Below, one piece after another: positions 1,954 to 30,256 of a stretch of 64,000 bases of DNA. A program made the position numbers and the translations under genes. The notes under the pieces were generated by a model. The model did not search any database. It was given only the letters and a program-made list of their open reading frames with translations, and was not told the DNA's origin. Location of the stretch: IMG/VR virus record IMGVR_UViG_3300028864_000014, positions 62,001 to 126,000 of that record; one strand, 5' to 3'. Numbering within the stretch: the first letter of the stretch is position 1; every line of letters starts with the position of its first letter.

Positions 1954-2961
1954 ATGGACTATAAAAAGGATTATTATAAAGAATTAGGATTAAATAAAGA
2001 TTCATCTGAGGAAGAAATAAAAAAGAAATATCGAAAGCTTGCAATAAAATATCATCCTGACAAAAATCAAGGAGATAAAGAAAGCGAGGAAAAATTCAAA
2101 TCAGTATCAGAAGCTTACGAAGTATTATCTGATAATTCAAAAAAACAAGAATATGACACGCGTAGTCCAAATGGAAATTCATTTTCACAATTTGGTGGGC
2201 AAGAATCAAGTTTTTTTGGAGGAGGCATGAATTCTAGTTTTTTCAATCAATTCTTTGGTGGAAATAGTCCATTTGGAAATTTTTCCGGTAAAGAAGAATT
2301 TTCTGAAAACTTAGACATAAACATAAATGTAGATATAGATTTTAAACAGATATATAAAAATGATAAAATTAAAGTAAAATACAACAAATTAATTAGTTGT
2401 GATGACTGCAAAGGTACTGGATTTGATAAATCTGGACATTCAGATGATTGTGATGTATGTGATGGTACAGGAATAAATAATGGAAGAGATTGTGAGTACT
2501 GTCAAGGTACTGGAAAAATTCATAGTGATAAATGCAAAAAATGTAATGGGGAAAAAGTAATATTAAAAGAAACTGAAATAGAATTACAAAACATATCGGA
2601 AATTAGATCCTCCAATAGAAATTTGCAATATGGTTATGGTAGTCAATCAAAATACTATAAAGATAGAGTAGGAAGCTTAATTTTAAATATAAATATTATA
2701 AATAGAAGTAAATGCAGCATAATAAATAATTATGATTTAATTTCAGAATTAGATATACATTTTCAAGATGCCATTGATGGAAGCAAAATATATTATACTC
2801 ATGTTGATGATACTAAATTAGAAATTAAATTACCTAATAAAACCAAGGACAAAGATACAATAAAAATAAAAGAAAAAGGTTTATTAAGACAGAATGGCAA
2901 AAGAGCAGATTTATATCTGAAATTAAATATTGTCATAGACTATGACAAATTAAATATATAA
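1954..2961 (+). CDS. dnaJ: DnaJ chaperone (J-domain, G/F region, Zn finger)
   Basis: KDYYKELG...YHPDKN J-domain, a G/F-rich segment, and [30 protein letters not shown] repeats. Confidence 0.95.
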
Positions 2962-3297: not shown

Positions 3298-3801
3298 TCA
3301 ATCATAAGATTGACTTTCTTTTTCATTATCAAATATTTCTTGTAATTTAAGTTTACGTACAATTCTTTTAGATTCTGATAAAATTTCATCTTTTGATTTA
3401 TAACAAATAATATTATTCAAATCAATATACAATCTATCACTACATATTGAAGTTCTATAATATCTATACGTATCCATAGGAATATAGTCATCATAATATA
3501 TAGGTCTGCGTATTAAATATTTAAGATCATTATCAAGTAAGTATTTAAAATTATGCTGTACCTTTTTTAATATTTCAGAATAAACATCATTCCAATTTTC
3601 ACCAATTTTAGAATCCAAAAAATCAGACAAAGGTTTATTGTCATAATGATGACAATGATAATTGTCTCCATATTTTTTCATTGATTCATGATAAGGTAAA
3701 TCTGAAAACAAATCAATATCATTATTTCTTTTTGTTTTAACATATTGATATTGTCGTCTTGAAAAATTAGATCTTCTATATAAAAATTTATTTTTAAGCA
3801 T
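3298..3801 (-). CDS. hypothetical protein with RxxKL-type tag
   Basis: 167 aa ORF with IVRKLKLQEI near the C-terminus. Confidence 0.7.
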   Translation of the reverse strand: MLKNKFLYRRSNFSRRQYQYVKTKRNNDIDLFSDLPYHESMKKYGDNYHCHHYDNKPLSDFLDSKIGENWNDVYSEILKKVQHNFKYLLDNDLKYLIRRPIYYDDYIPMDTYRYYRTSICSDRLYIDLNNIICYKSKDEILSESKRIVRKLKLQEIFDNEKESQSYD

Positions 3802-3821: not shown

Positions 3822-4268
3822 TTATGACTCCTTAATAAGATCTCTATATTTTGCAGCGGTTTCGTAATCTTCTACATTAACACAATCCAGCATTTTCTCA
3901 TTAAGAATTCCTTGTTGTATTCCACGTATTTCAGGATCATCATATTTATAATTTTCTATCAAATCTTGAAATATATTAAAATATTTTTCTGTTTCACGAA
4001 TAACATCTTCTTTTTTAAGATTAGCAACTTTAAACATATCTATCATATCAATATGTTCATTTACCTTTTTCATTTTATTATAAACACCATAAGCATCTAG
4101 CATAAGCTCATCAATATGTAAAACATTAGAATCCACTAAAACACTATCTATTGATATAGATTTATCAAGCAACATTTGATGATTAAATTTTTTGTGCTCA
4201 AATAAATAAAATGTTTGAACCCAAAAAATAAGGGTTCTGATGTCGTTAACATTAATCTTTGTTTTCAT
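3822..4268 (-). CDS. protein with C-terminal UVR (UvrB/UvrC-type) coiled-coil motif
   Basis: C-terminal EKMLDCVNVEDYETAAKYRDLIKE fits the UVR pattern (M..AV..EdYE.AA.lRD.I). Confidence 0.75.
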   Translation of the reverse strand: MKTKINVNDIRTLIFWVQTFYLFEHKKFNHQMLLDKSISIDSVLVDSNVLHIDELMLDAYGVYNKMKKVNEHIDMIDMFKVANLKKEDVIRETEKYFNIFQDLIENYKYDDPEIRGIQQGILNEKMLDCVNVEDYETAAKYRDLIKES

Positions 4269-4281
4269 AATTTCAATATAA

Positions 4282-4674
4282 TTATTTAAATTGTTTTATT
4301 TTTTCTTTTTCAATAATCTCATCAATAATAATCAAATCACTAAGAGATAAACTATTAAGAATATTATTAAAATCATCTAAATTTAGTGATTTTATTTTTT
4401 CTATTAATTCTTCAATAAATGGAATTTTTTCTAATCGTTCAAGTTTATCCGCTCTTTCTTTTTTTATATCTGGACCTGGTTTCAATTTACCTGATTTGTA
4501 TAAATCTATCAAATCTTTACTTTCTTTCAATCCTAATTTAGAATATTCTTTCATCATTTTAACAGACATAATATATTCAGTTCCTGAAATGTATGCTTCA
4601 AATTCAGATTTGTGATCAAATAAAATTTTTGCGCCTAATATTAAATGATCTGCATTAATAATTACTGAATTCAT
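4282..4674 (-). CDS. ribosomal protein bL12 C-terminal-domain-like protein
   Basis: MSVKMMKEYSKLGLKESKDLID resembles the bL12 signature I.VIK.VRE.tgLGLKEAKdLV. Confidence 0.6.
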   Translation of the reverse strand: MNSVIINADHLILGAKILFDHKSEFEAYISGTEYIMSVKMMKEYSKLGLKESKDLIDLYKSGKLKPGPDIKKERADKLERLEKIPFIEELIEKIKSLNLDDFNNILNSLSLSDLIIIDEIIEKEKIKQFK

Positions 4675-4715
4675 AATGAAATATTTTATTTAAAATTATA
4701 CATCTATTTATGCAG

Positions 4716-4746
4716 CAAAGATAATACAATATTTTTAAATAACAAA
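4716..4746 (-). promoter_or_regulatory. Bacteroidota sigmaA-type promoter (-33 TTTG / -7 TATCTTTG)
   Basis: Minus strand TATCTTTG at 4723-4716 with TTTG at 4746-4743 (19 nt spacing), upstream of 4674. Confidence 0.75.
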
Positions 4747-4748
4747 AA

Positions 4749-5060
4749 CTAATTGAATATTTTTTTCAATTTCTTTTTTCTTAGCATTTTTATTCCACCA
4801 ATAATCTCTACATTATCAAACTTAAATTCTTCACGTTCATTTTTTTTAGAAACATACAAAGTACTATACATTACTAACAAAAAGTATTGTTCTTTGAAAA
4901 GTGGATGGTCTTTTTTTATTTTATTTTTCAATTGAAATGTTTTCAATTGAAATAAATATGTAATAAAAGCATCACTTTTTGAAGATAACTCAATAGGATT
5001 TTTATTTTTTATATGAAAATCAATATCCTTAATGAAATCATATAATTGATAATTTGACAT
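4749..5060 (-). CDS. hypothetical protein with RxxKL-type C-terminal tag
   Basis: Ends MLRKKKLKKIFN. Confidence 0.7.
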   Translation of the reverse strand: MSNYQLYDFIKDIDFHIKNKNPIELSSKSDAFITYLFQLKTFQLKNKIKKDHPLFKEQYFLLVMYSTLYVSKKNEREEFKFDNVEIIGGIKMLRKKKLKKIFN

Positions 5061-5065
5061 AATTT

Positions 5066-6268
5066 TTAATCTAAATAAATAGTAGGAACAGATGATAAAT
5101 AATACAGATTTAAATTTTGATTAATTAATATAGCATCTGATGGCTGATAGCCTAATTCTCCATCATTAAATACAACATCATTAAATAATCCACAAATAAA
5201 CAATCCATTGTTAATTGTTCCTCCTGACCAAAATCCATTCCACCAAGTTCCATTATTGAATGTTCCATTTTCCCATATTCCTTCTAACCAAGTTCCATTA
5301 TTAAATGTACCATTTAAATGAGTACCTCCATACCAAGTACCATTATTCCATGTTCCTCCTGACCAAATAGTTCTATTATGATTATCTGACAATGATGTTA
5401 AACCTGATTGAATATTCAATCCTGAATGAAATTCTCCTTGATAAAATATACCATCATGCCAAATAACAGAAGGGAAAGCCAATTCTGTTGTACCAGACAC
5501 AGGCCATGAACCAAATCTACTTCTAACATTAATATCTGTTTGATTAAATTCACCATTCCACCAATGACTAGCAGAAGAGCCCAATGATTGAACAACTTCA
5601 GTATTACCAATAAAATCTCCTCCATTAAATTTTCCATTCCACCATTCATACCCTTGAAATGTTCCATTTAAAAATGTTCCATTAACCCACTCACTATTAT
5701 AAAATATACCATCTTTAAATATACTATCATTAACATAATAGCTCAACCAAACAGCATTTCTAAAAATACCATTATTAAATATACCAGTTTCCCATCTAGT
5801 ATGATAATAAATAATCTCACTATTTAACATTTGATCCCAAGTATCAACGTCTTTATCAGTACCTTGATCAATTCCTGGTCCGAAATATCCATTAAAAAAT
5901 TCGCCTCTTCTCCAAATACCACGTCTAAATTGTGAATATATTGGATTATTTTTTTCTATAATTCTTATATTTCTTTGTAATAATTGATTAGTATCAAAGC
6001 GATAAGAATAGAATTTTCCATTTTTCCATTCACCATCTTCCCATATTCCAGAATACCAAGTACCATCTTCCCATTCTCCTGCTTTCCAAGTACCTGAATA
6101 CCAAACCAATCCATAATCATCCTGTCCTATTATTGCATTCTCAATAATTGCATTTAATAACCAAATATATTTTCTTTTGATAATATCTGGTGTTAATCCA
6201 TCAATCATAACACAATTTAATAATGCATCAGAATAATTGGTTATATTATAAATTTTTGTTGTTGCCAT
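5066..6268 (-). CDS. (W/F)xxGx pentapeptide-repeat protein, probable beta-solenoid virion protein
   Basis: Many repeats such as WYSGTWKAGEWEDGTW and FNNGTWLEGIWENGTF; preceded by a TTTTTTTATATATAG motif. Confidence 0.7.
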   Translation of the reverse strand: MATTKIYNITNYSDALLNCVMIDGLTPDIIKRKYIWLLNAIIENAIIGQDDYGLVWYSGTWKAGEWEDGTWYSGIWEDGEWKNGKFYSYRFDTNQLLQRNIRIIEKNNPIYSQFRRGIWRRGEFFNGYFGPGIDQGTDKDVDTWDQMLNSEIIYYHTRWETGIFNNGIFRNAVWLSYYVNDSIFKDGIFYNSEWVNGTFLNGTFQGYEWWNGKFNGGDFIGNTEVVQSLGSSASHWWNGEFNQTDINVRSRFGSWPVSGTTELAFPSVIWHDGIFYQGEFHSGLNIQSGLTSLSDNHNRTIWSGGTWNNGTWYGGTHLNGTFNNGTWLEGIWENGTFNNGTWWNGFWSGGTINNGLFICGLFNDVVFNDGELGYQPSDAILINQNLNLYYLSSVPTIYLD

Positions 6269-7088: not shown

Positions 7089-9434
7089 TTAGGCTATTGC
7101 ATCTACTATCGTGGTTGCATCAAATACTAATTTATTAACTCCTGTTGAACTAACAAATAAAATTTTTGTGTATGTAAGATAAACATAAGTTGATATTGTA
7201 AAATTAGAATGTGAAAAATTATTATTAACCTGATTTGACTGAAAATTACTACCAATAACATTAAACATAAAGTTACATCCGATATTATTTCCAGTAAAAT
7301 TATTTCCAACAGTATTTTGTGTATATTCATTTCCTATTATATTAACACTAAAATCACTTCCGATTACATTAGTAACAAAATTGTCTTCTATTGAGTTAGC
7401 TTGAAAATTCGAAATAATGTTATTATTACTGAAATTGGTTCCAATTCTATTACCTGCAAAATTGTCACCTGATATGATATTAATTTGAAATCTATCACCA
7501 ACAATATTAGACGTAAAATTATTATCTATAGTATTCTGATAAAATCCATTACCAATATCATTTGAATCAAATCCAGATTTAATATTATTCTGATAAAATC
7601 CATTTTTAATTGAATTAGAATTAAAAAGATTTGTGATTATATTATATCGAAAATTATACCCAATAATATTAATTTTAAAATTGTCACCAATTTTATTATA
7701 TTGAAAATTATCACAAACAATATTATTAATAAAATTAATACCAATAATATTATGATGATGCAGATTATTCATTATATTATATTGAAAATTAGACTTAATA
7801 ATATTGTTAAAAAATTGAATTTTAATATTATTATACATAAATGTTGCTCCAATTGAATTAGTATAAAAAGAATATTTTATCACATTAAGTACAAAATTCT
7901 TTGAAATTATATTTTTTGAAAAATTTTGTCCAATTGAATTTTGACTAAATCCATAACCAATTGAATTACCTTCATTAATATTTCCGTTATAATAACCAAA
8001 ATAATTACCAATTGAATTATTATTAAAATTGGATCCAATTGAGTTGTGCATAAACCCACTTCCAATTGAGTTATTATAAAAACTTTCACCAATTGAGTTA
8101 TTAGTAAAATTAAATCCTATCGTGTTACCATAAAATATATTTCCAAAAATAACACTAGTACAATTATTAAGAATATTATTATATCCATTATAAGATCCTA
8201 TATGATTATTATAAATATTACTAGTATATGACACAAACATAGCATAGTCTGAATATAATGTTGTACAAGGTATATTTGAGTTTATGTTATTATAATTAAT
8301 TGCAGTTGTACTCACATAACTTAAATTATTCCATTCAAATAATTTCCAAACATTGTCATTATCAGAAGATGGATTAATTCCAGTCACTCCACTATTTAAA
8401 CAAACATAAATAGTTACTCCACTATATAAAACTACATCATTATTGTTATATGTAGTTGAAGGATCCCAAATATTAGTAACATTTATTTGCCATCTACGAA
8501 ACTTAACATTTCTAAAATCAAAAGGAATATTATTATTCTGAAGAGTATCAATTCTTCTATAAATATAACCCTTTGTACAACCAGGTACAATTGCTTGATC
8601 ACTTACTGAATTATAATAAATTATATCTTTAGGATATAAAACTGAATAAGCTTCAGGTTTTAATGTGTTTGAGCTACTTGCAGTTACTAATAAAGGTTCT
8701 GTTATTCCACTATTGATATCAGAAGTACCTACAATAGTATGAACTGTCTGATAATCTGTAATCGAATAAGTTCTATTAATATTTAATCCATTAGAAAGGA
8801 TCAAAGCTCTCAAATCTGCATATAATATATTAGTGACACCTGATGTAGTATTTATTCCATTTATTCCATTTATTCCATTTATTCCTGATGTTCCATTTGT
8901 ACCACTCGCACCTGATGATCCATTAGTTCCATTTGATCCATTAGTTCCATTTATACCTGATGTACCAGTTTGACCATTTATACCTGATGTACCAGTTTGA
9001 CCATTTATACCTGATGTACCTGATGACCCAGCTGGTCCAATTGGAATATTAGTATATGACAGCACTCCATCAACATCTGAAACTAATATTTTACCTACTC
9101 CATATCCAGGAGATAAACAAGTAATACCAGATTCAATATTTATATTTTTAGTGTGTAGAGTATCAGTATCTGAGTCAAAATATAAAGTATCAGTTGTTGT
9201 ACCAGAATCTTCAAAAAAATACATTTGTTTTATTGTATTTTCTCCTACTCTCATCCACACATTTTCATCCGTTTCATTAAGAAAAAACTCTCCGATATAA
9301 ATATCAGTTGTTCTCCATGATGGTAGCAATGTATGATCATCATGTGATCCTCCCAACGCTGGAATTGTTGCAACATCACCAGAAACAGTATTTCGTTTTA
9401 CAATAACTCTACTATATTTTTCAACTTTAGACAT
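7089..9434 (-). CDS. tail fibre-like protein (GxxG low-complexity stalk plus N-x-IG-x-NF beta-helix repeats)
   Basis: GSSGTSGINGQTG repeats, then a long run of NNxIGxNF repeats. Likely start is ATG 9434 (MSKVEK) rather than TTG 9476. Confidence 0.7.
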   Translation of the reverse strand: MSKVEKYSRVIVKRNTVSGDVATIPALGGSHDDHTLLPSWRTTDIYIGEFFLNETDENVWMRVGENTIKQMYFFEDSGTTTDTLYFDSDTDTLHTKNINIESGITCLSPGYGVGKILVSDVDGVLSYTNIPIGPAGSSGTSGINGQTGTSGINGQTGTSGINGTNGSNGTNGSSGASGTNGTSGINGINGINGINTTSGVTNILYADLRALILSNGLNINRTYSITDYQTVHTIVGTSDINSGITEPLLVTASSSNTLKPEAYSVLYPKDIIYYNSVSDQAIVPGCTKGYIYRRIDTLQNNNIPFDFRNVKFRRWQINVTNIWDPSTTYNNNDVVLYSGVTIYVCLNSGVTGINPSSDNDNVWKLFEWNNLSYVSTTAINYNNINSNIPCTTLYSDYAMFVSYTSNIYNNHIGSYNGYNNILNNCTSVIFGNIFYGNTIGFNFTNNSIGESFYNNSIGSGFMHNSIGSNFNNNSIGNYFGYYNGNINEGNSIGYGFSQNSIGQNFSKNIISKNFVLNVIKYSFYTNSIGATFMYNNIKIQFFNNIIKSNFQYNIMNNLHHHNIIGINFINNIVCDNFQYNKIGDNFKINIIGYNFRYNIITNLFNSNSIKNGFYQNNIKSGFDSNDIGNGFYQNTIDNNFTSNIVGDRFQINIISGDNFAGNRIGTNFSNNNIISNFQANSIEDNFVTNVIGSDFSVNIIGNEYTQNTVGNNFTGNNIGCNFMFNVIGSNFQSNQVNNNFSHSNFTISTYVYLTYTKILFVSSTGVNKLVFDATTIVDAIA
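8851..9020. repeat. in-frame tandem repeats (9, 18 and 27 bp units)
   Basis: TTTATTCCA about 4 copies (8851-8886), GATCCATTAGTTCCATTT x2 (8917-8952), CCATTTATACCTGATGTACCAGTTTGA about 2.7 copies (8947-9020). Confidence 0.9.
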
Positions 9435-9490
9435 TAATAATTTATTATTTTTATTATATATTATTTTATTAAACAAAAAATATACACTTT

Positions 9491-11644
9491 TTATATATTA
9501 GAATTTTTACCACCGTCAATTAATGTATATAATAACGGAGGATTATTTGGTCCAGGTAAACTAACATCTAATCCAGAATCCATAATATCTCCTAATTCAT
9601 TTCCTTTCATACCATTCAAAGAATCTTCATCACCTCCATTCAAAACATTCCAATAAATTTCAATGGTAGAACCAGACAATACTGTTAAAGGAACTGGTAA
9701 TCTTGATTTTCTATCAGAACCAATATATACCAATTCAATTGTAGAAAAATATAAAAGAGGATCAGCATTTTTATCAATATTAGATCCTAAATTGAATAAC
9801 TTTAATATGAATTCATTATTTTCATTTTCATATAATAGTCCAGTAGCGTACAATCTAAAATACTTATCTAATACTAAAATATCAGCATATGATTTACAGA
9901 TATATTTTCTTTCATTATCATTTTTTTGAATATACCAATCATATGGAACATTCATATAAACTTGATATAATATATCTGATATGTTTAATAAACCATCTAT
10001 ATTTTGAATTGATATTATATCAGTAGCAGGATAAAAAGGAAATGATGAAGGTTTTTCAATTATCATTTCTGTATCATGAACACTATAAATTAAAGACTTA
10101 CCATTAATTATTACTCCTGATATATTAATATATGTATATTCTTTAAATTTATTTAATAATCCTCCTTGTGCATAAATAATTCTTATTCTATTATTATCAG
10201 TATATTGATATGTGAATCCAGTAAGTAAAAAATTATTATAAAGAGAATAATCTTCTTTGAATCCATTAGGTTCTAGTCTATTCAAATTATCGAATAACTT
10301 ATAACTAACATATTGATTATATGTAATAAAAGAATGATCAATCCAATTATTATTATCATTTAACGATATTTTCAATCCATCATAATCAAAATATTTATCA
10401 TATTCACAAATTTTTGCAGTAAATCTTATATCTAAATAATTTGTATTATAAGTTCTAACTTTTATATCATAATAATCAGAATATGGTGAGTTAAAAGACA
10501 ATTTATCAAGAGCATCTTCCCAACTTATTCCAACATTTAGATTTTCCACCGAAAATGAATTGGGTTTTAAATCATTCATTATTCTATTTGGAATAGTTTC
10601 TTCTAAAATTAAATAACCTGATTTAATATCCTTTATAAAGGTATTTAATTTTAGAATACTTATTGAATTTAAATCTAATGTATCACCACTATAAATATTT
10701 AACTCAATATAATCTCCTATCACACAATCAAAATATTGTGAATAAGGAATAGCAGTAAATCCTTTTAATATATTATTACTAATTTTATTGGTAATACCAG
10801 TAAATTCTGAACTAATAGTTAATCCTGATCTAATAATATATGAATTGTGATGATAATCTATTTTAGCAATTTCTGAAGATAAATACAAACTATTAATATC
10901 AAAATCTATTTCGTTATATTTTTCTGCATTAGTATTTAATTGTTTTCTTGCAACATCATAATCTGTAAAAAAAATTTTAGATGTACTTCCAGAATCCGAA
11001 TATAATCTTTCTAAATCATATTTAACTAAATTTTTAAGTATAAAAGATTTACCTTCAATAAAATATTTAACTTCTCCTGTAATTGGAAAAGTAGAACCTG
11101 CATTAGATAAAAAGAATTGTTTATCAGAATTATTACCTAATTTAACACTACAACTAAATTTATCAGATTTTTCTCTATTATTTAAAACATTAGAATTTAT
11201 TAAAAAATTTTTATTTGTTACAGTATAAATATCATTTTCTGACTCACTACCTATATTTTGATTTTTTAACAAAATTAAATGTCCTGGCTTGATATTAACT
11301 CCATTAATTTGAGTCCATTGTTTAGATATGTCAATGTGGGTATCTGCTGCTACATCTACAAATATTATATTTTTAAGTACTCTATCAATAACATCATATT
11401 CATTATACATATTAACAATAGAATAACCATCTCCTGTTAATAGATTTTCTTTATTATAAATATCATCTAAACTATTAATATATGTATATGTGACTCCTGT
11501 TAAATATTTATTAAATCTAAAATAAATATCTCCAACTGCAATAAATTTATCTTCATCATATTTAACAGAACGAGTTTTCTGAACAAATGTTCCATCATTT
11601 TGTTTAATCCAATCAAATTTTCTAGATTTTCTATTTTTTTGCAT
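9491..11644 (-). CDS. putative virion structural (tail/baseplate-associated) protein
   Basis: VDVAADTHIDI...INGVNIKPGHLILLKNQ...ENDIY resembles a recurrent phage tail-protein motif (IDGV.L..GDRVLVKNQ...ENGIY); preceded by TTTTTAATATATAC. Confidence 0.6.
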   Translation of the reverse strand: MQKNRKSRKFDWIKQNDGTFVQKTRSVKYDEDKFIAVGDIYFRFNKYLTGVTYTYINSLDDIYNKENLLTGDGYSIVNMYNEYDVIDRVLKNIIFVDVAADTHIDISKQWTQINGVNIKPGHLILLKNQNIGSESENDIYTVTNKNFLINSNVLNNREKSDKFSCSVKLGNNSDKQFFLSNAGSTFPITGEVKYFIEGKSFILKNLVKYDLERLYSDSGSTSKIFFTDYDVARKQLNTNAEKYNEIDFDINSLYLSSEIAKIDYHHNSYIIRSGLTISSEFTGITNKISNNILKGFTAIPYSQYFDCVIGDYIELNIYSGDTLDLNSISILKLNTFIKDIKSGYLILEETIPNRIMNDLKPNSFSVENLNVGISWEDALDKLSFNSPYSDYYDIKVRTYNTNYLDIRFTAKICEYDKYFDYDGLKISLNDNNNWIDHSFITYNQYVSYKLFDNLNRLEPNGFKEDYSLYNNFLLTGFTYQYTDNNRIRIIYAQGGLLNKFKEYTYINISGVIINGKSLIYSVHDTEMIIEKPSSFPFYPATDIISIQNIDGLLNISDILYQVYMNVPYDWYIQKNDNERKYICKSYADILVLDKYFRLYATGLLYENENNEFILKLFNLGSNIDKNADPLLYFSTIELVYIGSDRKSRLPVPLTVLSGSTIEIYWNVLNGGDEDSLNGMKGNELGDIMDSGLDVSLPGPNNPPLLYTLIDGGKNSNI

Positions 11645-15438: not shown

Positions 15439-15475
15439 AATATGTTATATATTATTTTTTACATATAAGAAATTG

Positions 15476-15490
15476 TTTTTTTATATATAT
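15476..15490 (+). promoter_or_regulatory. candidate phage late promoter
   Basis: TTTTTTTATATATAT 18 nt upstream of GTG 15509. Confidence 0.55.
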
Positions 15491-15508
15491 AAGAAAAAAC
15501 CAATTTCT

Positions 15509-18500
15509 GTGGACAATTCAAAGTATATTTTTTTCAATAAAGAAGGGTTTCCTCACAATTTTACATACAATAAATATTCTGAAAGTTGGAATGGTAAAAT
15601 AATATTTGATGAAAATTCAGATCAGACATTTAAAACACAAAGTTTATATATGTTTGAAAGTGTTAATCCAATAGATTTTACTGTTCCTGCAAATTTACTA
15701 TCAATGAACTATAACAATAATAGTGGAATGACAATTTCAGGATTATCTAAATCTGGTGATACTATTTATCAAAATGAAACAATAACCAACATAACAAAAG
15801 TCAATGATTCTACTGATTTTTATTCTAAGTGGATATATGGAATAGATTTTCATAAAAAATTCCCAGTAGGTACAGTGATTAATTTTTCAGGTATAACAAA
15901 CTCATCAGATTTTAGTAATGATAAATACTTCAATGTATTATCAGTTAAAAAGAACGCTTTTTTAATTATAACAAATACAAGTAATGACATTTTCAATTAT
16001 ACATTTTCATCTGGTACAACAAGTTCATTAAACATGATTTCTATTAATGATTATAATAGAAAATTATCAGATAATAATTTATTAATTCAAAATTTATATT
16101 CAGGAAAAGTTTTTTCATTAATAAACACTACACATAATGATGGAATTGTTAGTGTAATAGAATCTGGAACAACTAAATCATATTTAAATGAAATACAAAT
16201 TGATGATGAAATAGATAAAATTTTTACATTAACAATAGAATTATTCACTGAAAGACCAACTATTTTACAAAATAATATCATATTAAATTCTTCTTCATAC
16301 AATACTGGAACTCTTAATATTGGTAAATATGCATATTTATTAGCTCCTACTACAATTTATACAGAATCAGGAATAGAGCAATCTAAAATGAACGTAATAT
16401 TTGAAGATGATTTAGGTAATAAATTATTCAGTGGATATACTTTTACAATTGAATCATTAGTGACAGACAATATTTTAGGCGATAAATTTTTGAATTTCAA
16501 GACATTTTACGATTCATCTAATGTAAAATATAAATCATATAGTGTAACTAGTAATACAACACAATGGAACACTATTCAATTTGAAGGAACATTAGATATT
16601 AAAATTGGTAGTATAATACAACTAAATGGAGTAAAAGACATTAATAATACAGGTTCTACATTTTTAATGGATAATAGAGAATTTAGTGTCATAAATGTTA
16701 GTTATGATTTAAGTTCAGATACAACTATGTTATTTGTATCTGGGTATATTATAGATGAAAATAATTCAACTTATACAATAACACAGAAACTACAATCAAA
16801 TCAAATAAAAAATGTATATTTCACATCATCTGGTGACATATCTGAATTTAACAGAACTACAATTAGTAATGCATATTGTTATTCAACATCAAATATTATA
16901 AATTTATCACAAATGTATATTAGTGGAAAAACTAATAATATATCATATGATACTATAACAGTTTTTCTAAATAAATATAAAAACATATTAAATAGATATG
17001 GTATAGATGCTTATTATTCAAATAGAAATAATATTGATTATTTGTCTATTGAAAGTCTATATGGCACAAATAGTAATTATTTTTCAGTTTCTGGCTATTC
17101 AAATAGTGTTAAAATAAATGATAATTTTTATTTAACGAACAGCGGAACAACTACAAAATATGACATTATAATAAATGAAACTTTAATACAAGAAAAAACA
17201 AATAAATCTGATTTAGATTTATATAAAACTGATGCGCATTCAGAAATAGTACTAAGATTACAAAATGATAATGATAGATTTGGATTCAATTTAAAATTAA
17301 ATGGAAATGAATATAGCATAGGTTTTTCTATTGATTCACAAACTACTATTAATAATTTCATTAATACATACGGTGATATCATGTATAGTAATGGTTATAC
17401 TATATATAGTGGATATAGTATTAATCACACAGGTTATACTTTAAATATCAAGTCAGATAACGATATTTGGGATTTAGGCGTAATAATAAATATATTATCT
17501 ACATATGAAATAATTGAAAATCAAAGAAATAATGCGATATTATTATCTGGAAATGAAATAAAAACAGATACAAATCTATTTGATTTAAACTTGGCTACAG
17601 GAATGTTATTAAAAATTACAGGCAGTACATATGAAATTAATAACAAAGAATATAATATATTATATTTATCTGAATCAGCTATAATATTATCATATCAAGG
17701 AGTATTTAACACTGAATATAATTCAATAATTGGAGGAACAACAAGAGAGTTCATCAGAAAGCCAAGAGGAGAATATAATAAAGATGTATATTTAAAAGCA
17801 TACTGGGAAGTACCATATCAAGATGAAATTGATGAATCAATATTCTTCTATGATATATCTGGGGATCAACTAACTCCTTTTAATGACATTGATAAATTAA
17901 AATACACAGGACAAAAACCATTAATTGATTTAACTAATAATATAGTATTTCTTAATAATATACCAAATACTAATATTACACAGGTGAAAAATCCTAAATA
18001 TCAGCAAACAGTTTTTACTGGATTGACGTATAAATTAGAACAATTAGATTCATCAATTTCTCATAATTATATACCAGAGCCATTAGAAATTTTCATAGGA
18101 TATAATTCTACTGAAGAAGGTGTAAATACTAGAACATTAAAAATTGATAAAATTATAACTCCTGTGAATAATACTAATTATTTATCATTAAGTGGATATA
18201 CAAACTCTGGAAATACACTTTCATTGAATAATTTTACATTAAGTGGAAATGTTATTAATTTTTTATCTACATTTGATTTTAATTTTAAAAATTATTTTGA
18301 AATAGATCAACTAATAACAATAAAATTTGAAGACAAAAATAATAAAAATCAAATAATAAATGAAAATATAAACATCTATAAAATATCAGATTTAACAAGA
18401 AATAAAATATTTATTGACACTGGTTATACTTATGTAAATGATTCAAGTGGTTATACATATGATGACTCTGGATTTACATATTTTAATACTACTGGATCAA

Positions 18501-19762
18501 CATTTTATTATGACATTGAAATTCAGCCTAAAGAAATATTATCTTGTGTATTATATGGACAAACTGAGATCGAAGACATTAGATTTAAAGTAAATCTAAA
18601 TAATGTAGGGGTACAATTAGAAGATGATGTTTATAACATTTTATATCTATCTGATATTGAAGATAACGCAATAGATTATACTCTATTCAATCGCAAAAGA
18701 AAAGAAATGTTATTAAATTATAGAGAGGTTTATGATTATATTGGTTCATATAAAGCATTAATAAATGCTATCAATTTCTTTGGTTATAATGATTTATATT
18801 TATCAGAATATTACAGAAATATAGATAAATCATCAACACTTTACGGTAGTTTGCATAAAATATTAATTCCTGATATATTTGATAATAGTGTTCCTGGTTG
18901 GAATGAAACAGATTTTATAAGTAGTAAATATCAAAATAAAATATCATGGAAAAAAACAAATTTATTCAATCTATCATATTCAATAACTGATTACGATGGA
19001 AACAATATTTTAATCTATTCATTAGATGAAGTTCAAACAAAATTGACTAAATTAAAAACTTGGTTGAGAAGACATATAGTACCATTATCCACCAATTTAG
19101 TTGATATAACAGGAGTTTCTGATACTAGTCAAACACTATATCAAAATTATGATGAATCAAATCAAGTTAAAAAATCAGTAGTAGACAGAAGTTCATCAGT
19201 AGTAAATTTCAATTACACGGCAACTTTAAATTTTGGTTCAGATTATTTAGTTACTGTTAATTTCTATACTTTATTCGGTGCAACAGGCACTACAATAGAT
19301 AATAATGAAATACCTAATGAGTTTTCTGTTAAAATAAAAACTTTCTATCTTTCTGGTACAACATTTATTGAACCAACAGAAACTTTAATACCTGTTCAAT
19401 ATTTTAAATTACATAAAAATGATTTATCATCATTTAGTTTTAGTTTAAATAAAGATGTTGATCCATATATTTATGTTGAAACAACTACTTATGATAATGG
19501 AGGAAGTGGAATTGGATATGTTAATAATAAATTATTCTATTATGATGAGCCAAGAAATTATTGGTTAGTTAATAATAATTTTGATTTAACAAAAATGAAA
19601 TATTATCAAACTACTGATCATATAACAAATACTGTTCAATATTGGGACAATTCAAATGCTACTTATAATAATAGCAGCACAATTATTTCATCACCAGTGG
19701 AAACTATCGTAAAAGTAAATTCTTTAAATAAAACATACATATCTAAAATAATACCAAAATAA
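15509..19762 (+). CDS. large virion structural protein, probably baseplate wedge-type
   Basis: About 1417 aa, rich in N, S, T and Y. The GSYKALINAINFFGYNDLYLSEY segment resembles baseplate/tail-I-type domains. Likely start is GTG 15509. Confidence 0.55.
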   Translation: MDNSKYIFFNKEGFPHNFTYNKYSESWNGKIIFDENSDQTFKTQSLYMFESVNPIDFTVPANLLSMNYNNNSGMTISGLSKSGDTIYQNETITNITKVNDSTDFYSKWIYGIDFHKKFPVGTVINFSGITNSSDFSNDKYFNVLSVKKNAFLIITNTSNDIFNYTFSSGTTSSLNMISINDYNRKLSDNNLLIQNLYSGKVFSLINTTHNDGIVSVIESGTTKSYLNEIQIDDEIDKIFTLTIELFTERPTILQNNIILNSSSYNTGTLNIGKYAYLLAPTTIYTESGIEQSKMNVIFEDDLGNKLFSGYTFTIESLVTDNILGDKFLNFKTFYDSSNVKYKSYSVTSNTTQWNTIQFEGTLDIKIGSIIQLNGVKDINNTGSTFLMDNREFSVINVSYDLSSDTTMLFVSGYIIDENNSTYTITQKLQSNQIKNVYFTSSGDISEFNRTTISNAYCYSTSNIINLSQMYISGKTNNISYDTITVFLNKYKNILNRYGIDAYYSNRNNIDYLSIESLYGTNSNYFSVSGYSNSVKINDNFYLTNSGTTTKYDIIINETLIQEKTNKSDLDLYKTDAHSEIVLRLQNDNDRFGFNLKLNGNEYSIGFSIDSQTTINNFINTYGDIMYSNGYTIYSGYSINHTGYTLNIKSDNDIWDLGVIINILSTYEIIENQRNNAILLSGNEIKTDTNLFDLNLATGMLLKITGSTYEINNKEYNILYLSESAIILSYQGVFNTEYNSIIGGTTREFIRKPRGEYNKDVYLKAYWEVPYQDEIDESIFFYDISGDQLTPFNDIDKLKYTGQKPLIDLTNNIVFLNNIPNTNITQVKNPKYQQTVFTGLTYKLEQLDSSISHNYIPEPLEIFIGYNSTEEGVNTRTLKIDKIITPVNNTNYLSLSGYTNSGNTLSLNNFTLSGNVINFLSTFDFNFKNYFEIDQLITIKFEDKNNKNQIINENINIYKISDLTRNKIFIDTGYTYVNDSSGYTYDDSGFTYFNTTGSTFYYDIEIQPKEILSCVLYGQTEIEDIRFKVNLNNVGVQLEDDVYNILYLSDIEDNAIDYTLFNRKRKEMLLNYREVYDYIGSYKALINAINFFGYNDLYLSEYYRNIDKSSTLYGSLHKILIPDIFDNSVPGWNETDFISSKYQNKISWKKTNLFNLSYSITDYDGNNILIYSLDEVQTKLTKLKTWLRRHIVPLSTNLVDITGVSDTSQTLYQNYDESNQVKKSVVDRSSSVVNFNYTATLNFGSDYLVTVNFYTLFGATGTTIDNNEIPNEFSVKIKTFYLSGTTFIEPTETLIPVQYFKLHKNDLSSFSFSLNKDVDPYIYVETTTYDNGGSGIGYVNNKLFYYDEPRNYWLVNNNFDLTKMKYYQTTDHITNTVQYWDNSNATYNNSSTIISSPVETIVKVNSLNKTYISKIIPK

Positions 19763-26503: not shown

Positions 26504-29500
26504 ATGAAAATTGCACACTTAGCTGATGTTCACATTAGAAATCTAGAAAGACATGAAGAATATGATAAGATTTTTCAAAAAATTATAAAAAAATTACAAG
26601 AATTACAACCAGATAGAATAGTTATTGTAGGAGATTTATTTGAAAGTTACATTGAAATTTCAAATGAAGCTGAAATTATCGCTGGAGATTTCTTGAATAA
26701 GTTATCAAATATTGCGAAAGTAATAATAGTCAGAGGTAATCATGACATAAGAAAGAAAAGTTTAAATAGAGTTGATAGTATAGAAACTGTAGTTAAACTT
26801 ATGAATAATCCAAATGTAACTTACTATGATAAAACTGGTTTTTATGATGATGATAATGATAATTTCGTTTGGGTTGTGTATGAGCACTCAGATAAAGATA
26901 ATGATCCATGGTTAAATAATAAAAAAACTGATGATAAAATTCATATTGGATTATTTCATGATCCAGTTTTAAATGTAACATCAAATACAGGAAAAGTATT
27001 TAATGATGCTAATAAATATAAAAATATAAATTATTTTAATAATAATGATTTTGTTCTTATTGGTGATATTCACAAGCGTCAATATTTAAGAAACGATAAA
27101 TCTGCAGCATATTGTGGTTCAACAATCCAACAATCTTATGGTGAAACTGTTGAGAATCATGGTTTTTTATTATGGAATATTAAATCACCTTCTGATTTTA
27201 ATGTTACTGAATATGATATTGAAAATGATCATACATTTATAAATTTATATATTGATGAATCATCAGACTATGATAATTTAAATTTATCTGCTAATAATAT
27301 TGGAAAAGACACTGAGATTAAAGTTCATTGGAAAGAATACTCTTCAATCATTAATACAGTAAATGAAAAGAAGATACGAGATTATATTAAAAATAAATTT
27401 AACACAATTAAGGTAGTTTTTGAAAAAAATTATTTATATACAGATATATTATCATCTAAGATGTTATCAGAATCTATTGATTTGACTGATACTGAAACTC
27501 AAAGAGAAATATTTAATGAGTATTTAGTAGAACAGAAGTATAAAAAAGATGACATTGAATCTATACTTAATATTGATGATATCATCAATAGTAGAATACA
27601 ATTAGTAGATGTTTTGAAGAATACAGAATGGAGTATTGATAAATTCTGGTTTAGTAATTTTAAGTCTTATGGAGACGACAATGTAATAGAATGGAAAGAT
27701 ATTAATGGAATTGTACAGATTCATGGTGAAAATCAGGAAGGAAAAACTACGATTCTTGATGCTCTTACTTATATTCTATATGGTAAAACTACAACAACAT
27801 TAAGTCCTGAAAAATTTGGAGACTCTAGATACATAAATAATAAAAGAGAATTAGATTTTGTTAATGGTGGAGCAGTAATTAATTCAAATGGTAATAAATT
27901 TGTAATTCAGAGAAAGACTGAAAGAGTTTGGAATAAGGCACACACATCTTTAACAAGTTGTCCTACATCTTTAGATTTCTATAAGAGTGAAGATATTTGT
28001 GAAAAAAATAAATTAACTGATGAAGTTAAAAGTAAAACTCAAAAAGAATTAGATTCTATTTTAGGAGATTTGAAGGATTTTATTAGACTATCATTCACCA
28101 ACGCTGATAATTTAAATGATTTATTATCTGAAAATAGAAGTATTTTCATGGATAATATTATTAGAGATGCTGGATATGATATATTTGAAACTAAATCAAA
28201 TGAATTTAAAGAATATAAAAAAGAAATTATAGAAGAAAAATTAATTGTAAATATTCAAGATTCAGAAGAAAATATAAAAGAATTAAATTCTGATATAGTT
28301 GATATTAAAGCAATAGTAGATACTAATATTTCTGAAATTGAAAGAATAGAAAAAGAATTATTATTGTATAATATCACTAGAGATGAATTAAATAAAAAAT
28401 TAAGTAATATTGATTTATCAATGTTAACTTTCAATGAAGATTTGAATTTAAATACAATTAAGAATTATAATACTAAAATTGAAGAATCTAAAATACAAAG
28501 AGTTAATTTAGAAAAAGAAATTGATAAATTACCTACTGAGTTTGATTCATCTAAACTTGATGATTTTAAAATTAAATTGAAGCAAACAAATTTAAAAATT
28601 TCAGAGTTAAAAGATAAAATTTCAACTTTAAAAAATTCATTGTTAGAATCAGATGGAAAGATTGATAAAGTTAATGTTAAGATTGAAGAACTGAAGCAAA
28701 ATGAGATTAAAAAAATACTATCAAAAATAACAGCAAATGATTTGCAAATTGAAGTTATTAAAAATAAAAAATCTAATATTATAAAAGATGAGATAAAAAA
28801 AATAACTTCTCAAATTCAAGTTTTTGAATTAGAATCCATAGAATTAGCATCGAATATAAAACTTTTACAAAAAGATGGTATTAATGCTAAAAAATCAAAT
28901 GATGAATTAGATAAAGAAATTGAAACATTTAAAAATTCAAAATCATGTCCTAGTTGCGGTAGAGCTTATGATAAAAATGATCCAAATTACTCAGAACACT
29001 TAGCTCATTTAGAAGATAAAATTAGAAGTCTTGAAATTAAAAAAGAACCAAATTTATTAATAATAAAAGATTGTTTATTGAAATATAAAGAATTGAAAAA
29101 TGATTCAATTGATTGTAATTCAAATATCTTTAATTATGAAGATATGAAAAAAAGATTAGAACAAGGTGATTATAATGAAGATATATTATCAAAATTAAAA
29201 GATGTCGGTAGTAGCAAGACATTGAGACAAGATAATATAGAATTGAATATATCAATTGAAAATATTGAAAATAATAACTTTGATAATTATTTAACATTAA
29301 ATGAAAATATTGATAAGGGTAAAACTCTAATAACAAACATAGAAAAAGGAAAAGATAATACTTTACAATTAATAAAAAACATCGAAGTAGAATTAAAAGA
29401 AATCAATATCGATGATATTGAAAATAATATTACAATAGAAGAAATTAAGAAAGATAATTTTGATTTGAGAAATAAAAAAATATCGAATAGAGATAATATT

Positions 29501-30256
29501 ATTTTGACACTTGAAAATTTTAATTTTAAAATTAAAGAATTAAAATCAGAAATTGAAAAATACCAAGAATATAAAGTTAAAATTGATGAAAATAAAAAAA
29601 TTCAAATTTCAATTGATGATGTAGATTATAATATTAAAAATTATAAAGAAAAAATAAAAGATTTTTCAAAAATAAATATTGATTTAGAAAAAAACATTCT
29701 TCTTAAAGAAACTGACATATTTAATATATCTACTAAAATAAAAAAATATTTAAAGCAAAAGAAACGAGATGAGTTATTAAAGGAGTATCAAAAATGTATT
29801 AGTCGTGATGGATTACCTACATTTTTATTAAAAAAATCCATTCATTTAATAAATAAAGAATTGAATGATTTACTGAGTAATGTTGATTTTACATTATTCT
29901 TTGATGAAAATTTGAATTTGAGACTTAGTGCAGATGATAGACTTGATACTAGTCAAAATGCTATTGAAAGCTCTGGTAAGGAAAGGACATTTTGTGCCCT
30001 TGCTTTGAAAATATCTTTGAGACAAATAAATGTAAAATCCAAATCTACTTTCATTGTTTTAGATGAAATTATGGGTAAATTAATTGATGGTAAGAAAACA
30101 AAATCTGTTCAACAATTTTTAGAATTTATTGATGAATTGAAATATAAAGTAAATAAAATAGTAATTATTGAGCAAGTGCATAATATAAATTTTGATGCTT
30201 CAATTGAAGTTGATAAAGACGATGAATTAATTTCTCACTTAGAATTAGTTTATTAA
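26504..30256 (+). CDS. fused SbcD-SbcC (Mre11-Rad50; T4 gp47-gp46-like) nuclease-ATPase
   Basis: Phosphoesterase motifs ADVH, VGDLF, RGNHD and GDIH; Walker A GENQEGKTT; coiled coil with CPSC Zn hook; SSGKE signature; Walker B IVLDE. Confidence 0.92.
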   Translation: MKIAHLADVHIRNLERHEEYDKIFQKIIKKLQELQPDRIVIVGDLFESYIEISNEAEIIAGDFLNKLSNIAKVIIVRGNHDIRKKSLNRVDSIETVVKLMNNPNVTYYDKTGFYDDDNDNFVWVVYEHSDKDNDPWLNNKKTDDKIHIGLFHDPVLNVTSNTGKVFNDANKYKNINYFNNNDFVLIGDIHKRQYLRNDKSAAYCGSTIQQSYGETVENHGFLLWNIKSPSDFNVTEYDIENDHTFINLYIDESSDYDNLNLSANNIGKDTEIKVHWKEYSSIINTVNEKKIRDYIKNKFNTIKVVFEKNYLYTDILSSKMLSESIDLTDTETQREIFNEYLVEQKYKKDDIESILNIDDIINSRIQLVDVLKNTEWSIDKFWFSNFKSYGDDNVIEWKDINGIVQIHGENQEGKTTILDALTYILYGKTTTTLSPEKFGDSRYINNKRELDFVNGGAVINSNGNKFVIQRKTERVWNKAHTSLTSCPTSLDFYKSEDICEKNKLTDEVKSKTQKELDSILGDLKDFIRLSFTNADNLNDLLSENRSIFMDNIIRDAGYDIFETKSNEFKEYKKEIIEEKLIVNIQDSEENIKELNSDIVDIKAIVDTNISEIERIEKELLLYNITRDELNKKLSNIDLSMLTFNEDLNLNTIKNYNTKIEESKIQRVNLEKEIDKLPTEFDSSKLDDFKIKLKQTNLKISELKDKISTLKNSLLESDGKIDKVNVKIEELKQNEIKKILSKITANDLQIEVIKNKKSNIIKDEIKKITSQIQVFELESIELASNIKLLQKDGINAKKSNDELDKEIETFKNSKSCPSCGRAYDKNDPNYSEHLAHLEDKIRSLEIKKEPNLLIIKDCLLKYKELKNDSIDCNSNIFNYEDMKKRLEQGDYNEDILSKLKDVGSSKTLRQDNIELNISIENIENNNFDNYLTLNENIDKGKTLITNIEKGKDNTLQLIKNIEVELKEINIDDIENNITIEEIKKDNFDLRNKKISNRDNIILTLENFNFKIKELKSEIEKYQEYKVKIDENKKIQISIDDVDYNIKNYKEKIKDFSKINIDLEKNILLKETDIFNISTKIKKYLKQKKRDELLKEYQKCISRDGLPTFLLKKSIHLINKELNDLLSNVDFTLFFDENLNLRLSADDRLDTSQNAIESSGKERTFCALALKISLRQINVKSKSTFIVLDEIMGKLIDGKKTKSVQQFLEFIDELKYKVNKIVIIEQVHNINFDASIEVDKDDELISHLELVY

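What the first reader, a model, noticed from the sequence alone, without database searches (positions are those of the whole stretch)
4282..4674. bL12 C-terminal-domain mimic under its own host-type promoter
The motif SVKMMKEYSKLGLKESKDLID matches the bL12 helix that binds translational GTPases, but it is embedded in a protein lacking the bL12 N-terminal dimerisation domain. It is followed by a loose RxxKL-like ERADKLERL. Known: bL12-like genes occur in some phages. Inference: a GTPase-factor decoy or recruiter, expressed early.
Basis: partly seen in the sequence, partly recalled or inferred. Interest (0 to 1): 0.6.

Follow-up and report, generated by a model that had tools for sequence, protein, structure and literature searches.

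The report
Phage protein with bL12 factor-binding hairpin
A small protein of a huge, very AT-rich phage has truly inherited only the two-helix hairpin that ribosomal protein bL12 uses to touch translation factors, set in a phage-specific all-helical scaffold, so it is a stripped-down relative of known phage bL12-like genes; its function has not been tested.

Summary
The ORF is real (4282-4674, minus strand, 130 aa) and so is the bL12 resemblance. A 38-member family profile matches only bL12 chains in the PDB (best E 1.9e-6). It aligns to an 80-species bL12 CTD profile at 96.9% probability (E 1.7e-10), and reversed and shuffled controls fail.

The homology covers only bL12 residues ~50-93: the beta1-equivalent segment plus helices alpha4-alpha5, the factor-contact hairpin. 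The bL12 N-terminal domain, the hinge and beta2-alpha6-beta3 (the uL11 contact) are absent. The AlphaFold model (pLDDT 83) is entirely helical. So this is a hairpin-only derivative, not a full CTD mimic and not a ribosomal protein.

Factor-contact positions are kept (K70 38/38, I69 37/38, L80 36/38, K84 36/38). The same hairpin also occurs in 2-6 tandem copies in many non-ribosomal proteins, so conservation does not prove factor binding.

The family is confined to one lineage of huge phages (contigs up to 711 kb), probably of Bacteroidota. It always sits in a conserved five-gene block next to a UVR-motif protein.

No sigma-70 promoter stands out. A Bacteroidota-type TTTG-N19-TAnnTTTG element is conserved upstream.

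The decoy or recruiter role remains untested. Verdict: new variant of a known kind, moderate interest.

The parts
4282..4674 (-). CDS of the 130-aa hairpin-only bL12-like protein (P0001)
   Evidence: ORF. Identical protein on 20+ contigs up to 243 kb. 38-member family A2. dN/dS 0.43-0.63.
4501..4620 (-). Residues 19-58: segment homologous to bL12 residues ~49-90 (beta1-equivalent, alpha4, alpha5)
   Evidence: hhalign. PDB profile hits. Translation checked.
4504..4566 (-).
   Evidence: Residue mapping and family conservation.
4288..4467 (-). Residues 70-129: phage-specific C-terminal helical domain (long helix 70-95, helices 99-108 and 111-129) with invariant R74 and K77
   Evidence: AF2 model, alignment. 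No bL12 NTD homology. Translation.
4432..4458 (-). ERADKLERL (residues 73-81): the most conserved family motif, R..KL..L
   Evidence: R74 and K77 invariant; L78 and L81 at 90% or more.
4716..4746 (-). Candidate Bacteroidota-type promoter TTTG-N19-TATCTTTG; the box ends 41 nt before the ATG
   Evidence: coordinates. TAnnTTTG conserved in 6/6 lineages with a gap. Consensus from PMC9723704. Window-wide enrichment is weak.
3822..4268 (-). Downstream partner gene: 148-aa protein with a C-terminal UVR motif, 13 nt after the target
   Evidence: PF02151 E 1.7e-7. Orthologous and adjacent in all 7 lineages, 45-80% identity. Family A6.
4749..5060 (-). Upstream partner gene: 103-aa protein of unknown function
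   Evidence: Orthologous in all lineages, 59-90% identity. No family hit.
5066..6268 (-). First gene of the conserved block: 400-aa W/G-rich repeat protein
   Evidence: Orthologous at 57-85% in 5 of 6 loci; L010 is cut off there. No family or PDB hit.
3298..3801 (-). Last gene of the conserved block: 167-aa protein of unknown function
   Evidence: Orthologous at 45-66% in 5 of 6 loci, displaced by an RtcB/GIY-YIG insertion in L010 and L012. Weak LmuA hit, E 3e-4.

Best explanation
Shown: the gene encodes a 130-aa, all-helical, two-domain protein of a small family confined to one lineage of very AT-rich huge phages. Residues ~19-58 descend from the first part of the bL12 C-terminal domain. That part is the alpha4-alpha5 hairpin, the surface that EF-G, EF-Tu, IF2, RF3 and EF4 touch on the ribosomal stalk. 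Nearly all factor-contact positions are kept. Everything else that makes bL12 a ribosomal protein is missing and replaced by phage-specific helices: the N-terminal dimerisation/bL10-binding domain, the hinge, and beta2-alpha6-beta3 with the uL11 contact. Inferred: it cannot join the stalk. It most likely acts off the ribosome as a docking surface for host translational GTPases, presented by its conserved C-terminal helical domain (invariant R74/K77), probably as part of a phage complex encoded by the conserved five-gene block (rep400, p103, target, UVR-motif protein, p167). The effect would be to hold or redirect factors during infection of an SD-less, probably Bacteroidota, host. Whether it sequesters (decoy) or delivers (recruiter) is open. 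Confidence in the anatomy and homology is about 0.9. Confidence in the factor-docking mechanism is about 0.3, which is the figure given.
For: Homology: 25/38 members hit PF00542 individually; 96.9%, E 1.7e-10; controls fail. Contact residues: NMR shifts at bL12 66-70 and 80-85 (PMC3505967). The family keeps K70 as K/R 38/38, I69 as V/I 37/38, R73 as K/R 36/38, G79 33/38, L80 36/38, K81 as K/R 36/38, E82 as E/D 31/38 and K84 36/38; many of these are charged and so probably surface residues. Missing parts: NTD; no sheet, no alpha6 signal. The lineage invests in translation: a bS1-like protein in the window, bS21 beside the block in a sister phage, RtcB beside it in another. Conserved block. Precedent: phage bL12-domain proteins exist, and one gave a peptide in 70S preparations (PMC6375957).
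Against: There is no direct evidence of factor binding. The same hairpin with the same conserved residues occurs in 2-6 tandem copies in at least 110 non-ribosomal proteins, 41 of which have N-terminal hydrophobic segments, so the residues may simply maintain the hairpin. Free bL12 CTD binds factors only at 0.1-0.4 mM, and here the domain is single-copy with no proven oligomerisation. None of the four block partners has a translation-related signature. Selection is only moderately purifying, and the target is the least conserved gene of the block.
Confidence: 0.3

Rival explanations
1. The hairpin is a general-purpose helical interaction or structural module with no link to translation factors. 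The protein is a subunit or assembly factor of a phage-specific complex made by the conserved five-gene block, for example pairing through its C-terminal helices with the UVR helical-hairpin protein.
For: The hairpin is widespread in non-ribosomal, often membrane-anchored or zinc-ribbon proteins, in 2-6 copies, and is fused to an orthocaspase (PMC8283722). Gene order is strictly conserved with 11-44-nt spacing to the UVR gene across lineages that differ in all other neighbours. The partner family has the same narrow distribution. Fibre-like genes lie just upstream (collagen/CBM protein).
Against: No function is known for any non-ribosomal hairpin protein, so this explains little. Charged contact residues are conserved beyond what a two-helix fold obviously needs. 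No evidence for the complex was obtained.
Confidence: 0.35
2. It is a small helix-turn-helix-like nucleic-acid-binding regulator. The N-terminal four-helix unit binds DNA or RNA.
For: The best structural matches of residues 1-66 are HTH, Myb, homeodomain and winged-helix domains (Z 4.3-5.6).
Against: Those Z values are in the range the tool itself calls a common arrangement for small helical bundles. The protein is mildly acidic (pI 5.8, family median 5.6) and the head is near neutral. The sequence signal is specifically bL12 (14/14 PDB hits).
Confidence: 0.1
3. It is a functional stalk protein that replaces host bL12 on the ribosome, with the C-terminal helices acting as a displaced (circularly permuted) bL12 N-terminal domain that binds bL10.
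For: HMMER repeatedly paired tail residues ~88-111 with bL12 helix 1 (0.3, 2.4 and 4.7 bits). hhalign of tail vs NTD gave P 0.0055. Mizuno et al. found a phage bL12-domain protein peptide in 70S preparations.
Against: The reversed tail (14.3) and reversed NTD (14.4) score the same as the real pair (15.1), so the signal is amphipathic periodicity. The tail profile finds no bL12 in the PDB. No member hits PF16320. The uL11-contact half of the CTD is absent.
Confidence: 0.04
4. It is a ClpS-like adaptor for the phage ClpB/ClpA-type unfoldase, paired with a UVR protein as in the plant ClpF-ClpS1 binary adaptor (recalled from my own knowledge, not looked up here). ClpS and the bL12 CTD share a fold class.
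For: The window encodes a Clp_N-bearing double AAA+ protein and DnaJ. The neighbour has a UVR motif.
Against: There is no ClpS (PF02617) signal in any of the 38 members. The model is all-helical and lacks the alpha/beta ClpS fold. The Clp gene is 28 kb away.
Confidence: 0.03

Closest known systems
Bacterial ribosomal protein bL12 (L7/L12), C-terminal domain (PF00542; PDB 1CTF, 1DD3)
   Same: Residues 19-58 align to bL12 ~49-90 with 31% identity over 42 columns, covering alpha4-turn-alpha5 including the GLGLKEAKD-type turn. The factor-contact positions 66-70 and 80-85 are retained.
   Different: No N-terminal dimerisation/bL10-binding domain and no hinge. No beta2-alpha6-beta3, so no sheet and no uL11 (K95) contact. 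The beta1-equivalent segment is predicted helical. There are 70 extra residues of phage-specific helices. Scores fall below the Pfam and TIGRFAM cut-offs.
Phage-encoded bL12-domain proteins (Mizuno et al. 2019, PMC6375957; e.g. Ralstonia phage RSB3, Dinoroseobacter phage DFL12phi1, Salmonella phage FSL SP-076)
   Same: A bL12 CTD-derived segment without the stalk-anchoring domain, encoded by a phage and embedded in non-ribosomal sequence. The proposed role is an interface for translation factors.
   Different: Those were reported in phages under 80 kb, with HHpred probabilities of 96-99.9% to the domain and conserved uL11-contact residues. This family is in huge phages (83-711 kb contigs) and keeps only the hairpin. 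It has its own all-helical scaffold and a fixed five-gene context, and it has no detectable sequence match in 50,697 deposited phage genomes.
Non-ribosomal proteins with tandem bL12-hairpin repeats (partial PF00542 matches at profile positions ~10-40; often also DUF6793)
   Same: The same ~35-40-residue unit (short helix, alpha4, alpha5) with the same conserved K, GLGLKE.KD pattern. Per-copy scores to the family head profile (median 26.7 bits) are comparable to genuine bL12 (median 23.1).
   Different: They carry 2-6 copies, often behind a membrane anchor or zinc ribbon, and look cellular. The phage protein has one copy and a distinct conserved C-terminal domain. Their function is unknown.

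Membership tests
Ribosomal protein bL12 (L7/L12) | N-terminal dimerisation / bL10-binding domain (PF16320) | tested here: not met
   No PF16320 hit in 38 members. The tail profile finds no bL12 in the PDB. hhalign gives 0.2-6.7%, and reversed controls score the same.
Ribosomal protein bL12 (L7/L12) | Complete alpha/beta C-terminal domain (beta1-alpha4-alpha5-beta2-alpha6-beta3), scoring above the curated cut-offs | tested here: not met
   PF00542 19 bits vs 25.9. TIGR00855 21 vs 84.4. Family alignments stop at bL12 ~93. beta2-alpha6-beta3 alone gives 0.1%. The AF2 model (pLDDT 83) has no strands.
Ribosomal protein bL12 (L7/L12) | alpha4-alpha5 hairpin with conserved factor-contact residues (66-70, 80-85) | tested here: met
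   hhalign 96.9%, E 1.7e-10 with failing controls. Conservation table. Contact residues from PMC3505967.
Ribosomal protein bL12 (L7/L12) | Incorporation into the 50S stalk; stimulation of factor GTPase | not testable with these tools
   Needs biochemistry.
Phage-encoded bL12-domain proteins (Mizuno 2019) | Encoded in a phage genome | tested here: met
   Identical gene on IMG/VR viral contigs of 95-235 kb. Relatives on contigs up to 711 kb. Phage-like gene content.
Phage-encoded bL12-domain proteins (Mizuno 2019) | Significant profile match to the Ribosomal_L12 domain, with residues for both uL11 and EF contacts | tested here: inconclusive
   The family-level match is significant, but only for the EF-contact hairpin. 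The uL11-contact half is absent.
Tandem bL12-hairpin repeat proteins (non-ribosomal) | Two or more tandem hairpin copies | tested here: not met
   One copy in the protein and in the whole window. 110 of 114 non-family hits have 2-6 copies.
ClpS-type adaptors | ClpS domain (PF02617) with an alpha/beta fold | tested here: not met
   No hit. All-helical model.
Bacteroidota sigma-A promoter | -7 box TAnnTTTG with -33 TTTG about 19-21 nt upstream | tested here: met
   TTTG-N19-TATCTTTG at 4716-4746(-). The box is conserved in 6/6 lineages with a gap. The -7 box consensus is from PMC9723704; the -33 TTTG and its spacing are recalled from my own knowledge.
Bacteroidota sigma-A promoter | Motif enriched upstream of genes genome-wide; mapped transcription start | tested here: inconclusive
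   Bipartite pattern 6 vs 4.5 expected. 9/76 genes with the box upstream vs 4.1+-1.9 in shuffles, with no coding/non-coding density difference. No transcript data.

The most novel reading that the evidence does not exclude
A lineage of huge Bacteroidota phages has cut the translational-GTPase docking hairpin out of bL12 and mounted it on its own scaffold, inside a dedicated five-gene module. This would create an off-ribosome factor-capture device that reprogrammes factor supply (EF-G, EF-Tu or IF2) during infection. It would be a new class of phage translation-takeover protein. It would also imply that the many cellular tandem-hairpin proteins are GTPase-factor tethers.
Probability: 0.15. Interest if true: 0.75.

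Novelty: new variant of a known kind. Interest (0 to 1): 0.4.

Why it matters
Phage-encoded ribosomal-protein fragments are known, but what they do is not. This family is a clean natural experiment. It keeps only the bL12 surface that touches translation factors and discards everything that ties bL12 to the ribosome. If it binds factors, it shows the hairpin is sufficient as a docking unit. That would give a handle on how huge phages of SD-less Bacteroidota, which also carry bS1- and bS21-like genes, take over translation. It would also suggest a function for the many uncharacterised cellular proteins with tandem copies of the same hairpin. If it does not bind factors, 'Ribosomal_L12' hits in phage annotation should be read as a generic helical module and not as evidence of ribosome remodelling.

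Tried and rejected
- **Shallow structure model.** AlphaFold with 5 close homologs gave pLDDT 55 and was unusable. The 38-sequence alignment fixed this.
- **Whole-model structure searches.** Foldseek against the PDB found nothing with E below 1. VIA-align wide gave only generic small-helical matches, Z 5.6 or less. BFVD top rows were phage 'bL12 CTD-containing' proteins, but at E 0.26-0.6.
- **Permuted bL12 (tail = NTD).** Rejected by reversed-sequence controls.
- **Extension of homology into alpha6.** Single-sequence alignments reached bL12 ~112-116. The family profile and the isolated beta2-alpha6-beta3 test do not support this.
- **Complex prediction, target + UVR neighbour.** No verdict, score 0.00. 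This is not evidence for or against binding.
- **Sigma-70 promoter.** No qualifying site in the gap, and counts are at chance.
- **Deposited phage genomes.** No DNA or protein match.
- **IMG/VR scans.** Only 5 loci. The full family alignment was too divergent for pattern search.
- **PHROGs.** Only weak hits to unknown-function families over the hairpin. The four partners gave no hits.
- **PADLOC.** Nothing for the target.
- **Partner proteins vs PDB.** Nothing meaningful.
- **ClpS adaptor idea.** No signal.
- **Model coordinates.** Not available to scripts, so exposure of the contact face could not be measured.

Full report
**The object.** Window 4282-4674 holds a 130-aa ATG-to-stop ORF on the minus strand. 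The window has 21-27% GC and no tRNA. It matches nothing in 50,697 deposited phage genomes at DNA or protein level. The identical protein occurs on more than 20 metagenomic contigs up to 243 kb, and relatives occur on contigs up to 711 kb. These include IMG/VR viral contigs of 95-235 kb. Gene content fits a huge phage: DnaJ, a ClpB/ClpA-type AAA+ protein, an SbcCD fusion, a collagen/CBM fibre-like protein and a multi-domain S1-like protein.

**Is the bL12 resemblance real?** Alone, the sequence is sub-threshold but consistent.
- Pfam Ribosomal_L12 gives E 0.0018, 19 bits against a 25.9 cut-off.
- TIGR00855 gives 21 bits against 84.4.
- The 14 best PDB matches are all bL12, best 1dd3 at E 9e-4.

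A profile search of 1.84 billion representatives found about 30 full-length relatives of 98-137 aa. With the close homologs these give a 38-member family at 25-92% identity (A2). 25 of the 38 hit PF00542 individually, best E 2.5e-6. The head profile (residues 5-66) hits 14/14 bL12 chains in the PDB, best E 1.9e-6. I then built a bL12 profile from 80 species fetched from genomes. Against its CTD, hhalign gives 96.9% probability, E 1.7e-10, score 49.8. Reversed head or reversed CTD score 10-13, and 60 column shuffles give 8.8+-2.0 with a maximum of 14.6. The homology is therefore established.

**How far does it extend?** Every family-level alignment covers only bL12 residues ~49-93: the beta1-equivalent EF.. 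segment, alpha4 and alpha5. The beta2-alpha6-beta3 segment tested alone gives 0.1%. Single-sequence alignments that ran into alpha6 are not backed by the family. With the 38-sequence alignment, AlphaFold gives a confident model (pLDDT 82.9) that is entirely helical. The helices are 8-20, 22-29, 34-45 and 49-61, then a linker, then 70-95, 99-108 and 111-129. So the three-stranded sheet of the bL12 CTD is absent. Structure searches give nothing specific.

**Is the tail a displaced bL12 N-terminal domain?** HMMER repeatedly paired residues ~88-111 with bL12 helix 1, with scores rising with alignment depth (0.3, 2.4 and 4.7 bits). hhalign of the tail against the NTD profile gave P 0.0055. The reversed tail (14.3) and the reversed NTD (14.4) score as well as the real pair (15.1), so this is amphipathic periodicity and not homology. 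The tail profile also finds no bL12 in the PDB. The protein has no stalk anchor.

**Factor-contact residues.** NMR titrations place the EF-G/EF4 contact on E. coli bL12 residues 66-70 and 80-85, with Kd 0.1-0.4 mM. They place the uL11 contact around K95 and 103-109 (PMC3505967). Using the hhalign register, the family keeps the contact positions as follows:

| bL12 residue | Family residue | Count (of 38) |
|---|---|---|
| K65 | K | 28 |
| V66 | L/I | 36 |
| I69 | V/I | 37 |
| K70 | K/R | 38 |
| R73 | K/R | 36 |
| G79 | G | 33 |
| L80 | L | 36 |
| K81 | K/R | 36 |
| E82 | E/D | 31 |
| K84 | K | 36 |
| E88 | D/E | 36 |

The uL11-contact region has no counterpart. The caveat is important. The profile search also found 114 non-family proteins, 110 of which carry 2-6 tandem copies of just this hairpin. 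These match PF00542 strongly (to 1e-38) but only over profile positions ~10-40 of 67. 41 of them have N-terminal hydrophobic segments and 8 have zinc-ribbon-like CxxC pairs. A Ribosomal_L12 domain is also reported fused to a cyanobacterial orthocaspase (PMC8283722). The hairpin is thus a mobile module with the same conserved residues in contexts that are clearly not ribosomal. Conservation alone cannot show factor binding.

**Context.** In the window and in six independent related lineages the gene sits in the same block: a ~400-aa W/G-repeat protein, a 103-aa protein, the target, a 146-166-aa protein ending in a UVR motif (PF02151, E 1.7e-7), and a ~167-aa protein. The target-to-UVR gap is 11-44 nt. 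Other neighbours differ between lineages.
- The window group and L009 have DnaJ and a HAD phosphatase nearby, and L009 also has bS21.
- L010 and L012 have RtcB, and L010 also has PPK2 and GIY-YIG.

The target is the least conserved block member, at 39-66% against 45-90% for the others, with dN/dS 0.43-0.63. The UVR partner family is as small and lineage-restricted as the target family. None of the partners has any other recognisable family or solved relative. A complex prediction for target plus UVR protein returned no verdict and is not used as evidence.

**Promoter and host.**
- The sigma-70 scan finds no qualifying site in the 74-nt upstream gap, and the region's site count is at chance (30 vs 32.3).
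- The TATAAT at 4695-4700 is one of 339 in the window (323+-18 expected).
- Aligning the gap across lineages shows a conserved TAnnTTTG box in all six lineages that have a gap (TATCTTTG, TATTTTTG, TACTTTTG, TATATTTG).
- In the window the element reads TTTG-N19-TATCTTTG (4716-4746, minus strand), ending 41 nt before the ATG.
- TAnnTTTG is the sigma-A -7 box of flavobacteria (PMC9723704). The -33 TTTG and its spacing are recalled from my own knowledge.
- Window-wide enrichment is weak: the bipartite pattern occurs 6 times vs 4.5 expected, and 9/76 genes have the box upstream vs 4.1+-1.9. The argument therefore rests on conservation at this locus.
- In L010 the gap is only 13 nt, so an own promoter is not universal.
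- Only 2 of 76 genes have an SD-like motif, and leaders are 55-70% A.
- Together with bS21 in a sister phage, and published huge bS21 phages of freshwater Bacteroidetes (PMC9723584), this points to a Bacteroidota host. That is an inference.

**Interpretation.** Shown: this is a hairpin-only bL12 derivative in a phage-specific all-helical scaffold. It is single-copy, mildly acidic (pI 5.8) and fixed in a five-gene block of a huge-phage lineage. Inferred: because it lacks every ribosome-attachment element, it cannot be a stalk protein. The most specific hypothesis is an off-ribosome docking surface for translational GTPases. This fits the retained contact residues and the lineage's other translation genes: bS1-like in the window, bS21 and RtcB in relatives. 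The equally weighty rival is that the hairpin is a generic helical interaction module and the protein is a subunit of an unknown phage complex. HTH-type nucleic-acid binding, stalk replacement and a ClpS-like adaptor role are less likely, for the reasons given under the rivals.

**Comparison with the known.** Phage bL12-domain proteins were described by Mizuno et al. 2019 (PMC6375957). They were found in phages under 80 kb, often embedded in larger proteins, with conserved uL11 and EF contact residues. One gave a peptide in 70S preparations, but its tagged form could not be used to purify ribosomes. The present family differs in several ways. It keeps only the EF-contact hairpin, has its own conserved C-terminal domain (invariant R74/K77), occurs in huge phages and has a fixed gene context. 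It fails the membership tests for bL12 itself (no NTD, incomplete CTD, below cut-offs). I file it as a new variant of a known kind, of moderate interest.

Noticed in passing
window 42582-43736 (+): 384-aa multi-S1-domain protein matching ribosomal protein S1 models over ~340 residues (E 3.5e-34, below the equivalog cut-offs): a phage bS1-like gene.
   Followed up: partly
window 32277-34811 (+) and 1954-2961 (+): A ClpB/ClpA-type double-AAA+ unfoldase with a Clp_N domain (844 aa) and a full-length DnaJ (J domain, CXXCXGXG, C-terminal domain): a phage-encoded proteostasis set.
   Followed up: partly
window 26504-30256 (+): 1250-aa fusion of an Mre11/SbcD-type phosphoesterase with an SbcC/Rad50-type ATPase in one polypeptide.
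   Followed up: no
window 7089-9476 (-): 795-aa protein with collagen triple-helix repeats and a weak CBM_5_12 hit, probably a fibre. It lies just upstream of the conserved block.
   Followed up: no
window 15473-19762 (+) and 9491-11644 (-): Very large ORFs (1429 aa and 717 aa) with no Pfam hit at all.
   Followed up: no
whole window: The genome is effectively Shine-Dalgarno-less: 2 of 76 genes have GGAG/GAGG/AGGA at -20..-5, and leaders are 55-70% A. GC is 21-27% and there is no tRNA in 64 kb. This fits a Bacteroidota-type host.
   Followed up: partly
L009 6349-6543 (sister phage, 83-kb contig): A bS21 gene sits between the p167 gene and the p94/DnaJ genes. The window has no gene at the corresponding spot.
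   Followed up: no
L010 1622-5674; L012 3621-5048: In a more distant lineage, RtcB RNA ligase, a GIY-YIG nuclease and PPK2 are inserted right after the UVR gene, splitting p167 from the block.
   Followed up: no
window 3298-3801 (-): The 167-aa last gene of the block gives a weak PADLOC hit to LmuA (Lamassu) at E 3e-4 over residues 16-125. Probably not meaningful.
   Followed up: no
L017 4001-4396: This ortholog of the target carries a short internal tandem duplication (FDAYLSGTG twice) just before the hairpin, so that loop tolerates insertion.
   Followed up: no
proteins P0016-P0153: A large, apparently uncharacterised class of cellular proteins with 2-6 tandem bL12 alpha4-alpha5 hairpins, often behind a membrane anchor or zinc ribbon. 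Some are annotated 'ribosomal protein L7/L12' by source pipelines. P0047 has six full CTDs plus LRV repeats.
   Followed up: partly
window 35248-36351 (+): 367-aa protein with a glycoside hydrolase family 15 segment followed by TPR repeats.
   Followed up: no
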